64,000 bases of DNA, from contig OZ037767.1 in NCBI GenBank assembly GCA_964035545.1, positions 19,608,628-19,672,627 on the forward strand. Reading direction: 5' to 3'. Of the stretch, positions 52,201 to 55,200 are shown one piece after another. Position 1 is the stretch's first letter, and each line of letters starts with the position of its first letter. The notes beneath the pieces were generated by a model, which was given only the letters and a program-made list of their open reading frames with translations, did no database searches and was not told the origin of the DNA. The position numbers were made by a program, and so were the translations under genes. Origin of the DNA: Bugula neritina. Its lineage: Eukaryota > Animalia > Bryozoa.

Positions 52201-55200
52201 TATCTCTTGGTGTAATATTTTAACTTTGCTAGATTATTTAAAAAGTTTTGCATTGACTGGTTTAATAAAATCGGTATTGGTATTCTTTGTCTACTAAGTT
52301 TGAGCTTAAAAAAATAATTCTAAGAAGTATGTTTAAAACTCTAAGTGTTATTATATCAATATCAAATTTGTTTAATTTGTACAGATAACTTGTTGGTTGA
52401 GTTGTTTTGCAGTCGCATTGGATTATGTAACACATTTGTAGATGTTGAATTTAGCCTAGGATCTAGTCAATACTGACTTAACTCATATGCTATTACTAAC
52501 AACTAGTAATTATTAAAAGTGCATCAGTTTCCATGTAGCCTGAGGCACCTCACATGTTTGTTTCTTGATTTAGCTGGATGACCTGCGTAACTTAGTGCGA
52601 GGTAAATTGACCTCTAGAGAACGGCAAGTCTTGTCTGCTCTCATTGTCATAGAAGTTCATGCTAGAGATGTCGTGACTAATATGGTGGCCGAGAAGGTGA
52701 ACAATCTCAACGACTTTGAGTGGATCTCCCAGCTCAGGTGAGTTACTCAGACACTACAGTGAAAATATCTATCTGCAGTGAGAGTATCTATCTGCAGTGA
52801 GTAATATCTATCTGTAGTGAGTAATATCTATCTGCAGTGAGTATCTATCTGCAGGGAGTAATATCTACCTGCAGTGAGTAATATCTATCTGCAGTGAATA
52901 ATGTAAGAACTGTGAAAGTGTACTCGTTATTCATGCAGGTACTACTGGAAAGAAGAGAATCTCTACATACAAGCCGTTAATGCCGAGTTCTTGTATGGCT
53001 ATGAGTATCTTGGAAATAGTGGTAGACTTGTCATCACGCCTCTAACTGATCGGTAAGTTTATATAAACTTAGCAATTAACCAGTCTTTCTAAAAGGCACA
53101 CAGTTTGCTTCTAGTTGGTAATGATTTGGGTTTATGTTGTTGGGAATCCTGAAGCCTCTGTGGTGCAATGGTTAGTGTACCTGCTTGCAAGGCGGAGTCT
53201 CGGGTTTGAATCCCAGTGGCAGCAAAAAGTTCTTCACTTTACCTAAAATTTAAATGTTGTTAGATGTTACCTAACACTCACTGGAGCTCTTCACCTCAAG
53301 TTTGGGGGTGCTCCCGCAGGACCCGCTGGTACAGGGAAGACAGAAACAACTAAAGACTTGGCTAAGGCTATGGCTATTCAGTGCGTAGTGTTCAACTGCT
53401 CCGACCAACTGGACTTCATGGCTATGGGGAAGTTCTTCAAAGGACTGGCCAGGTACACAATGTTTCTGTTGTAATATTCTCTCATCTGCTTTACCTTTTT
53501 CAGCACCATAAATGGTGAGTAGTTCTTACTTGTTTTGGCAAAGGGCAAAATAAATGCTAGTAAGAGACTTTTTCTAAATCTTTGTAAATGGCCATTTGCT
53601 TGGCTGATGCAGTTTACCTTACCTGTAGCATGTTCCTAAAACTCTCATTGTTAAATGCATTTATTTGCTTGCATTTAGAGTTCTATGGCTGCATCTTGAG
53701 TAATTTACAAAAACAAATTTTCCATTTGTGTTAAATAATATTATGTAATATGGTATAATAGTATTTATAATATAATATGATACAGTATAATAACATACAA
53801 TTAATCTGTTCCAATGTAATATAATGTACCAAATTATAATATAATTATTTACAGAATTCATATAAGGGTTTCAACTGCAATTGAAATGATTAATTTTATA
53901 AATAATTTGCGTCGAAATCTACTGCAACTATTCTCATAATTGCTACTGCAAATGTTTTTGAATGCAATTTTAATTTTTTGTGCTGTTCAATGCATTTAGA
54001 AGCTGAAGATTTCTGTATAATTTAATAGCTTCAGTATGTTGAAGGATTTACTCTGTATTATGCAGCTCTGGAGCGTGGGCCTGTTTTGATGAGTTTAATA
54101 GAATAGACATTGAAGTATTGTCTGTAGTGGCCCAACAAATAGCCACTATTCAACAAGGCCTTAAGCAACGGGTGAGAGTTTGTTGGGGTGATGTCCATAA
54201 GCCCACAAAGCTGTCTGCACAAAAATTAACCACTCACACTAGCTGCACGTCTTTCGTGTGTTTCCACCACTGCTACTCACTCACTGCATTGTTTCTTGTG
54301 ATATGATTTAACCTTTACCTTTGCTAACACCCTGTGTGCTTTTGCTAACAGTGCTGGAGCGTGGGCCTGTTTTGATGAGTTTAATCGAATTGATATAGAA
54401 GTGCTGTCTGTTGTGGCACAGCAAATTTCCACCATACAACTAGCTTTGAGGAAGAAGGTAAGACGGAGTAGTTTGTAAATATGGGTGTGTTTTGTTGTGG
54501 TGGACATAATTAAAGTATGTTGAGGTCTGTTTTGCGAAAGTTGGTATGCCAGATTAAGGTAACTGCATTGCATTCATGTAGGTGTACTCTAGTGAAATAG
54601 ACTTGACTAGTGAAAATGTGTGTGATATAAAAGATATGTCAGATATTAGTTTCGAGTTTGTGGCATGCTAAGCAAGTGTGACACTAAACTCTGAAGTCTG
54701 GTTGCCTACTGCTGTAATATAGTTGCTTAACTGTTTCTATATTTCTTGACCTGAATTTATATGCTTGTATTGCTTTGTTGCACAAAAACCAGATGCTTCA
54801 TTTTCGCTAAACCACAAATTTTGCTTTTCATTTCTGAACGTTTTTATTCAATACTGTTTCTAGTATCTGAACATTTAGCACGTTACATGCATTAAAAAAG
54901 CACCTACGGTGTGAGTGTTTTAATAATTGTCAGGTTGAAATTTAAATTTTGAATTTTGTAACAGGGTCATTTGTATAATGTTTAATATACTATTGGTTTG
55001 ATAGGTGGACAGATTCATGTTTGAAGGCGTCGAGCTTGACCTCCGCCAATCTTGTGCTGTATTTATTACAATGAACCCAGGCTATGCTGGGCGTACAGAG
55101 CTGCCTGATAATCTAAAGGCTCTCTTCAGACCAGTGAGTAGGAGTTGTTTTGTCATGTTTTCCGATTTGCACCTTGTGATGACCATCTCTAAATGAATTG

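What the first reader, a model, noticed from the sequence alone, without database searches (positions are those of the whole stretch)
54066..54457. Duplicated, probably mutually exclusive Walker-B exon in the main ATPase site (AAA1) of DNAH1
Seen: two 106-nt exons, 180 nt apart, have identical phases and intact splice sites, and both encode [24 protein letters not shown]. By my count they differ at about 14 synonymous codons and 7 residues, six of which lie in the helix after Walker B ([10 protein letters not shown] vs [10 protein letters not shown]). Including both, or skipping both, shifts the frame (106 mod 3 = 1). Inference: this is an old duplication with both copies under purifying selection, giving two motor isoforms that differ next to the catalytic site, perhaps sperm flagellum versus epithelial or larval cilia.
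Basis: partly seen in the sequence, partly recalled or inferred. Interest (0 to 1): 0.8.

Follow-up and report, generated by a model that had tools for sequence, protein, structure and literature searches.

The report
Ancient swappable exon in ciliary motor
The gene for one of the motors that beat cilia and sperm tails (DNAH1) keeps two working copies of the exon carrying part of its ATP-splitting site, in this moss animal and in molluscs, ribbon worms and lamp shells, so one gene very probably makes two motor versions by either-or splicing; the trick is known, but I found no report of it at this spot.

Summary
Observation confirmed exactly: two 106-nt exons (54066-54171, 54352-54457), 180 nt apart, with intact AG/GT sites, 14 synonymous and 7 replacement differences; using both or neither gives an early stop. 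The genome matches Bugula neritina. The gene is a complete DNAH1 orthologue and this is its only doubled exon. The pair is not a local accident. It is kept in the same order in three other bryozoans (orthologous copies: synonymous sites at or near saturation, dN 0-0.07), a nemertean, two unidentified lophotrochozoans and a probable rotifer. NCBI protein isoforms of abalone, clam and scallops differ only in this exon, and a Lingula model holds both copies. Amphioxus, sea cucumber, coral and sponge-like loci have one copy. Catalytic residues are invariant; the swap changes the end of AAA1 helix H3 and the entry to the PS-I hairpin near AAA6. Tissue use is therefore untested, and a single origin is inferred, not shown. 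A known kind of event (mutually exclusive duplicated exons in a motor domain) at an unreported, very old site. This scan noted similar pairs in two other Bugula dyneins.

The parts
19236..64000 (+). DNAH1 (inner-arm single-headed dynein heavy chain, dynein d / class 8) gene; runs on about 19.5 kb past the window end
   Evidence: N-terminal exon 31402-31635 hits only DNAH1/DHC2-class chains in PDB (E 1.5e-19); AAA3 exon best hit DNAH1 (E 6e-53); tblastn of Tubulanus DNAH1 covers 4135/4212 residues in order
53264..53452 (+). Constitutive upstream exon: AAA1 Walker A (GTGKTET) to end of helix H2, ends in phase 2
54066..54171 (+). Variable exon A (106 nt): Walker B strand plus helix H3, ending [11 protein letters not shown]. 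First copy; in molluscs, nemertean and brachiopod the first copy keeps the ancestral-type sequence shared with deuterostomes
54172..54351 (+). Spacer intron, 180 nt, GT..AG, 107-nt AG-free zone before the acceptor. Weak candidate stem pairing the exon A donor with CTCAC at about 54233-54237
54352..54457 (+). Variable exon B (106 nt): same Walker B, helix H3 ending [11 protein letters not shown]. Second copy; the more divergent type across phyla
54896..54930 (+). Candidate (weak, seen in this species only) intron segment that could pair with the region before either acceptor; not supported by the other species
   Evidence: (inverted repeat I8)
55005..55133 (+). Constitutive downstream exon: AAA1 PS-I hairpin ([10 protein letters not shown]), sensor I, helix H4; starts in phase 0
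   Evidence: motif in PMC4047620

Best explanation
A tandem duplication of the ancestral 106-nt AAA1 Walker-B/H3 exon of DNAH1 became a mutually exclusive pair. Each mRNA takes exon A or exon B; messages with both or neither are out of frame and are probably removed by nonsense-mediated decay (inferred). Both copies have been kept by purifying selection, most simply since a single origin before bryozoans, molluscs, brachiopods and nemerteans split (early Cambrian or earlier, own knowledge; single origin about 0.7). The two motors have the same catalytic residues. They differ in the last two turns of AAA1 helix H3 and the first residues of the PS-I hairpin (positions 1651-1660 on PDB 8J07 DNAH1 numbering). 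That surface packs under the hairpin and lies toward the flexible AAA1-AAA6 interface, so the swap most likely tunes ring opening, product release or motor speed rather than ATP chemistry (inferred). The choice is probably cell-type dependent, giving different cilia or flagella different dynein-d kinetics from a single-copy gene (inferred; sperm versus somatic cilia about 0.45). How the choice is enforced is open; a stem that hides the exon A donor is the best lead but weak (about 0.3).
For: Frame logic. The same pair, in the same order, with 106-nt lengths and AG/GT in L023/L024, L028 and L030/L031, which form one clade with the window at 100% support. Orthologous copies: pS 0.55-0.96, dN 0-0.07 for both A and B; window versus L023 exon A has 18 synonymous and 0 replacement changes. 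Pair also in Tubulanus genomic DNA (L117), L033, L045 and a probable rotifer (L052). NCBI isoform pairs of equal length differing only in this exon: Haliotis rufescens X3/X4, Argopecten X1/X2 and X3/X4, Mizuhopecten X6/X7, Mercenaria X10/X11. Both types also occur in Mytilus trossulus, M. galloprovincialis, M. edulis and Ruditapes, and across Octopus species; the Lingula model contains both copies. One copy only in genomic loci of Branchiostoma, Apostichopus, a coral and sponge-like animals. Structure: H3 predicted at model residues 145-163 followed by a two-strand hairpin; AAA1 PS-I motif and its nearness to AAA6 (PMC4047620).
Against: RefSeq isoforms are automatic models (normally built on RNA-seq, own knowledge); their read support was not inspected. 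The 35-residue exon tree does not resolve all B copies as one clade, so several independent duplications are possible. The structure model has low confidence overall (mean pLDDT 54; about 70 over H3) and lacks AAA6, so the contact is taken from literature. No tissue data.
Confidence: 0.88

Rival explanations
1. Exon B (or A) is a recent local duplicate or decaying pseudo-exon, of the kind made by the tandem 'exon-boundary' repeats that fill Bugula introns.
For: This gene does have introns built from tandem copies of exon ends (41563-42427, 58098-59077, a 38-nt donor repeat at 55532-55607). The first ten full codons after the start of A and B are identical at all 9 synonymous sites.
Against: Both copies are present and intact in three other bryozoans with saturated synonymous sites and dN up to 0.07; A/B differences recur across species; the flanking introns of A and B are unrelated. 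The identical 5' tract is better read as a recent gene-conversion patch (L033 shows one in the 3' part).
Confidence: 0.03
2. Real mutually exclusive exons, but arisen several times independently (bryozoans, molluscs plus nemerteans, brachiopods, rotifers) because this exon is prone to duplication.
For: The exon tree does not unite the B copies. Bryozoan A and B share features absent from mollusc B (Q rather than M before QI). Both copies in the probable rotifer look derived. Convergent tandem-exon duplication is reported in other families (PMC9741552).
Against: Same exon and same order (ancestral type first, derived type second) wherever order could be read in lophotrochozoans; no duplicate in any deuterostome, cnidarian, placozoan or sponge record examined; mollusc, nemertean and L033 B copies group at 85%; gene conversion explains the blurred tree.
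Confidence: 0.25
3. The pair works mainly as a dosage switch: regulated double inclusion or skipping sends messages to decay, and the two proteins are functionally equivalent.
For: Both aberrant forms carry early stops; the replacements are mostly mild and away from the catalytic residues.
Against: A poison exon need not keep an invariant Walker-B protein sequence. The 5-7 A/B differences are themselves conserved among bryozoans, which implies selection on the difference.
Confidence: 0.07
4. Assembly artefact (haplotype duplication or collapsed paralogue).
For: None found.
Against: Copies are 24% divergent with unrelated flanks; the same layout occurs in independent assemblies of other species; the gene is otherwise single and collinear.
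Confidence: 0.01

Closest known systems
Mutually exclusive exon in cytoplasmic dynein heavy chain DHC1 of Schistosoma mansoni (Pillmann et al. 2011, PMC3228551; Kollmar 2016, PMC5100056, notes unnamed motor-domain splice forms in some dynein genes)
   Same: Duplicated, equal-length, homologous exons inside a dynein heavy chain gene of a spiralian, used one at a time.
   Different: Different dynein class (cytoplasmic DHC1 versus inner-arm DNAH1/class 8). Here the exon holds the Walker-B motif of the main ATPase site and is traced across several phyla. Neither paper's main text names this event; their supplements were not available.
Arthropod muscle myosin heavy chain mutually exclusive exon clusters (as summarised in PMC3228551)
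   Same: A single-copy motor gene diversified by swapping homologous exons within the motor domain to tune mechanochemistry.
   Different: Myosin has many clusters, several variants each, and shown tissue use; this is one two-exon cluster in an axonemal AAA+ motor with tissue use untested.
Tandem duplicated exon substitutions in general (PMC9741552, PMC5740500)
   Same: Ancient, conserved, conservative substitutions inside a folded domain.
   Different: No DNAH gene is mentioned in the main text of either human survey; vertebrate DNAH1 records examined show one exon type.
NCBI RefSeq DNAH1-like isoforms of molluscs (e.g. XP_048258404/XP_048258405, XP_069103581/XP_069103589, XP_021360697/XP_021360698)
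   Same: The same exon swap, present silently in automatic annotation.
   Different: Not described as a feature. Missed in Tubulanus (second copy unannotated) and mis-joined in Lingula (both copies in one model).

Membership tests
DNAH1 / class 8 inner-arm dynein heavy chain | DNAH1-specific N-terminal tail | tested here: met
   exon 31402-31635 matches only DNAH1, Chlamydomonas DHC2 and trypanosomatid-type relatives among PDB chains
DNAH1 / class 8 inner-arm dynein heavy chain | Motor domain closer to DNAH1 than to DNAH3/6/7/12; complete linker-AAA1-6 layout | tested here: met
   (181 bits versus 137 for the next class)
Mutually exclusive homologous exons (tandem duplicated exon substitution) | Adjacent internal exons of equal length, same phases, homologous sequence, intact splice sites | tested here: met
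Mutually exclusive homologous exons (tandem duplicated exon substitution) | Joint inclusion or joint skipping not productive | tested here: met
   early stops in both
Mutually exclusive homologous exons (tandem duplicated exon substitution) | Each exon under coding constraint across species | tested here: met
Mutually exclusive homologous exons (tandem duplicated exon substitution) | Each exon seen spliced alone in transcripts of this species | not testable with these tools
Mutually exclusive homologous exons (tandem duplicated exon substitution) | Tissue- or stage-specific choice | not testable with these tools
   no reads; paper searches gave no data on this exon
Steric-hindrance MXE (alpha-tropomyosin type) | Branch point of the second exon within about 50 nt of the first exon's donor, with an AG-free run to the acceptor | tested here: not met
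   spacers 180-3039 nt, AG-free zones only 18-199 nt; an AG follows the first branch-like motif in the window
Docking-site/selector MXE (Dscam, 14-3-3, Mhc type; PMC6071210) | Conserved intronic docking site pairing competitively with selectors beside each exon | tested here: inconclusive
   no conserved intron block among four bryozoans after 18 comparisons; one candidate segment in the window only

The most novel reading that the evidence does not exclude
One duplication in the spiralian ancestor created a cell-type switch in the main ATPase domain of dynein d (for example sperm flagellum versus feeding or locomotory cilia), kept for over 500 million years and controlled by a stem that masks the exon A donor. 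With the pairs noted in two other Bugula dyneins, this would mean Spiralia specialise axonemes by exon swapping inside motor domains, where vertebrates use paralogous genes.
Probability: 0.3. Interest if true: 0.7.

Novelty: new member of a known kind. Interest (0 to 1): 0.47.

Why it matters
DNAH1 is nearly always a single-copy gene with one fixed place in the axonemal repeat (PMC5100056), and its AAA1 core is among the least variable parts of the motor. A conserved either-or swap there gives a natural pair of motors that differ in 5-12 residues of one helix. That is a clean test of what AAA1 helix H3 and the PS-I hairpin do in ring mechanics, and of how animals that live by cilia give different cilia and sperm tails different beats. 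It is testable at once in public mollusc RNA-seq. It also corrects annotations (Lingula model, Tubulanus missing exon).

Tried and rejected
Afterwards the stretch was used only in local scripts and in one folding call. All homologue searches used exons beside it or relatives' proteins. The joined spliced model was not searched; exons were joined only inside local scripts for frame checks and a tree. No human contig was fetched; human DNAH1 appears only as a PDB chain in alignments. The large representative search was not used. P0008/P0009 long contigs gave no DNA, and the Nematostella gene was not on record, so the cnidarian check rests on coral locus L054. The sea-cucumber paper on sex-specific DNAH1 isoforms (PMID 36371882, cited in PMC12000136) is not held. 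It cannot be this event, because in Apostichopus the segment lies inside one larger exon with no second copy. Steric hindrance was rejected, and a conserved docking site was not found. Donor-masking stem: the exon A donor has the strongest downstream duplex of all donors tested in 6 of 7 species but not in the window (rank 6 of 26); shuffle p 0.02-0.70 per species; own-versus-swapped permutation p 0.011 with one donor span and 0.21 with another. It was noticed after looking at the data, so it is kept only as a lead. The exon tree was uninformative on a single origin. Supplements of PMC5100056 and PMC12000136 are not held.

Full report
Observation. Either one joins the Walker-A exon (ending 53452, phase 2) to the sensor-I exon (starting 55005, phase 0) in frame. 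Both together, or neither, end in a stop within 127 or 67 nt. They are 76% identical, with 14 synonymous and 7 replacement differences, six of them in the last ten codons.

Organism and gene. The assembly has 216,009,554 bases in 321 pieces and the window lies on a 32,418,041-base piece. This fits Bugula neritina tzBugNeri2.1 (216.00 Mb, 320 scaffolds plus mitochondrion, chromosome 3 of 32.42 Mb; PMC11480708); the identification is an inference from these sizes. The gene is DNAH1: an N-terminal exon hits only DNAH1-class chains and an AAA3 exon scores 181 bits on DNAH1 against 137 on the next class. With downstream DNA added, a nemertean DNAH1 is covered over 4135 of 4212 residues in order, and only the Walker-B exon appears twice. 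No full second copy lies within 1.5 kb of the 18 other Walker-B matches fetched from this genome.

Limits on method. The joined model was not searched. No transcript of this species was therefore seen.

Close relatives. An exon beside the pair (55922-56101) retrieved genomic contigs of other animals. L023/L024, L028 and L030/L031 group with the window at 100% in a tree of constitutive exons and are taken as three other bryozoans. Each has the same pair, A then B, 106 nt each, AG/GT intact, with spacers of 359, 787 and 420 nt. A copies end in I[AS]TIQQGLK[QA][RK] and B copies in IS[TS]IQ[LYI]ALRKK. Between species, orthologous copies differ at 12-21 synonymous codons and 0-3 residues, while A and B always differ at 5-7 residues. 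pS is 0.55-0.96 and dN 0-0.07 for both copies. Both exons are thus under strong coding constraint, and so is the difference between them. The 5' part of A and B in the window is identical at all nine synonymous sites, which suggests a recent conversion patch (inference).

Distant relatives. Two unidentified lophotrochozoans (L033, L045) have the pair. In the nemertean Tubulanus polymorphus the annotated exon is followed 1691 nt later by an unannotated 106-nt second copy with good splice sites. NCBI isoforms of equal length that differ only in this exon exist for Haliotis rufescens (X3/X4), Argopecten irradians (X1/X2, X3/X4), Mizuhopecten yessoensis (X6/X7) and Mercenaria mercenaria (X10/X11). 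Both types occur in three Mytilus species and Ruditapes, and across Octopus species. The Lingula model contains both copies in a row. A low-GC contig with short introns from a JGI metagenome, probably a rotifer (not established), has two copies, the second split 34+72 nt by an extra intron. Outside this group, Branchiostoma and Apostichopus carry one copy fused into larger exons, a coral carries one free-standing 106-nt exon, and sponge-like loci carry one copy. The echinoderm, hemichordate, tunicate, cnidarian and placozoan isoform sets examined each show one type per species, and vertebrate representatives are all close to the first-copy type. So the 106-nt exon is old and its duplication is so far confined to Spiralia. 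Some molluscs (Mya, Patella, Biomphalaria, Elysia, Littorina) and Macrostomum show only one type in their models; their genomes were not checked. In molluscs, nemertean and brachiopod the first copy is within 1-2 residues of the deuterostome sequence (Octopus excepted), while the second differs by 6-12. The 35-residue tree joins mollusc, nemertean and L033 B copies (85%) but does not unite all B copies, so one origin is the parsimonious reading, not a result.

Where the change falls. An AlphaFold model of scallop AAA1 (low overall confidence, about 70 over the helix) places the exon on the Walker-B strand and helix H3, followed at once by a two-strand hairpin. The next exon begins with the AAA1 PS-I motif, whose hydrophobic residues cover the H2-H3 cleft and whose conserved glutamate in inner-arm dyneins lies close to AAA6 (PMC4047620). 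The AAA6-AAA1 interface is described there as flexible. On PDB 8J07 DNAH1 numbering the exon is 1626-1660, Walker B is D1633/E1634, and the variable positions in Bugula are 1626, 1651, 1655, 1656 and 1658-1660. The catalytic residues never vary. The most likely effect is on how H3 and the hairpin move against AAA6 as the ring opens, and so on product release or stepping rate. This step is inference.

How the choice is made. Steric exclusion does not fit the spacer lengths or AG-free zones. No conserved docking element was found in four bryozoan introns. A stem that pairs the exon A donor with the next 60 nt is predicted in most species and ranks first among donors in six of seven, but it is weak in the window and the statistics are unstable. 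The safe statement is regulated exon choice backed by decay of out-of-frame products; the stem is a lead.

Comparison with what is known. Mutually exclusive duplicated exons are a well-known class (PMC9741552, PMC5740500). They tune arthropod muscle myosin, and one is reported in Schistosoma cytoplasmic dynein (PMC3228551). Kollmar 2016 says only that some dynein genes have motor-domain splice forms (PMC5100056). Paper searches on dynein or DNAH1 splicing found no description of this DNAH1 event, though it sits unremarked in mollusc RefSeq isoforms and subscription journals are largely not covered. Sex-specific DNAH1 isoforms reported for a sea cucumber must be a different event, as that gene has no separate exon here. 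Earlier notes of this scan describe old exon pairs in two other Bugula dyneins; I did not check them.

Verdict. A real, functional-looking and very old mutually exclusive exon pair in AAA1 of DNAH1: a new member of a known kind, at a notable position. Shown: anatomy, frame logic, constraint, wide distribution, either-or isoform models in molluscs. Inferred: use in Bugula itself, single origin, kinetic effect, tissue split. Interest 0.47.

Noticed in passing
window 41563-42427 and 58098-59077: Two DNAH1 introns consist of tandem repeats that begin at the donor and echo exon-end/donor sequence; also noted by first readers.
   Followed up: partly
window 55532-55607: A 38-nt tandem duplication spans the end of the exon at 55549 and its donor, giving a second, out-of-frame donor 38 nt downstream.
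   Followed up: no
window 2169-5400 (+): Exons of a BTB_3-domain gene (Pfam PF16017); KCTD20/BTBD10-like from memory.
   Followed up: partly
window 11667-14876 (-): Several 100-150 aa frames suggest another gene on the minus strand between the BTB gene and DNAH1; not identified.
   Followed up: no
L117:24519-24624 (Tubulanus polymorphus, OZ123226.1): Second Walker-B exon with intact splice sites is absent from the single NCBI protein model retrieved for this species.
   Followed up: yes
P0352 residues 1575-1655 (Lingula anatina XP_023931503.1): The model includes both alternative exons joined by a 9-residue filler; probably a mis-annotation.
   Followed up: partly
L045, second copy at 2326-2431: The nearly invariant Trp before Walker B is Met (AGAMAC) in this B copy, with frame and splice sites intact.
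   Followed up: no
L052:324-486: The second copy in a probable rotifer has gained a 57-nt intron inside the alternative exon (34+72 nt).
   Followed up: partly
L034:4513-5451: A 312-aa intronless protein kinase frame (PF07714, E 9e-45) lies on the same strand among the linker exons of a sponge-like DNAH1 gene, apparently inside an intron.
   Followed up: partly
mollusc, nemertean, echinoderm and hemichordate DNAH1 isoforms: Short optional segments recur near residues 2030-2050 and 3755-3765 (and near 2130 in Apostichopus), suggesting conserved micro-exons in DNAH1.
   Followed up: no
P0124, P0123, P0122 versus B-type exons: The single anthozoan and sponge exons end like B types (ISTIQQALEAR, ITTIQQAQIAK), whereas hydrozoan, placozoan and deuterostome ones end like A; unexplained, possibly convergence.
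   Followed up: no
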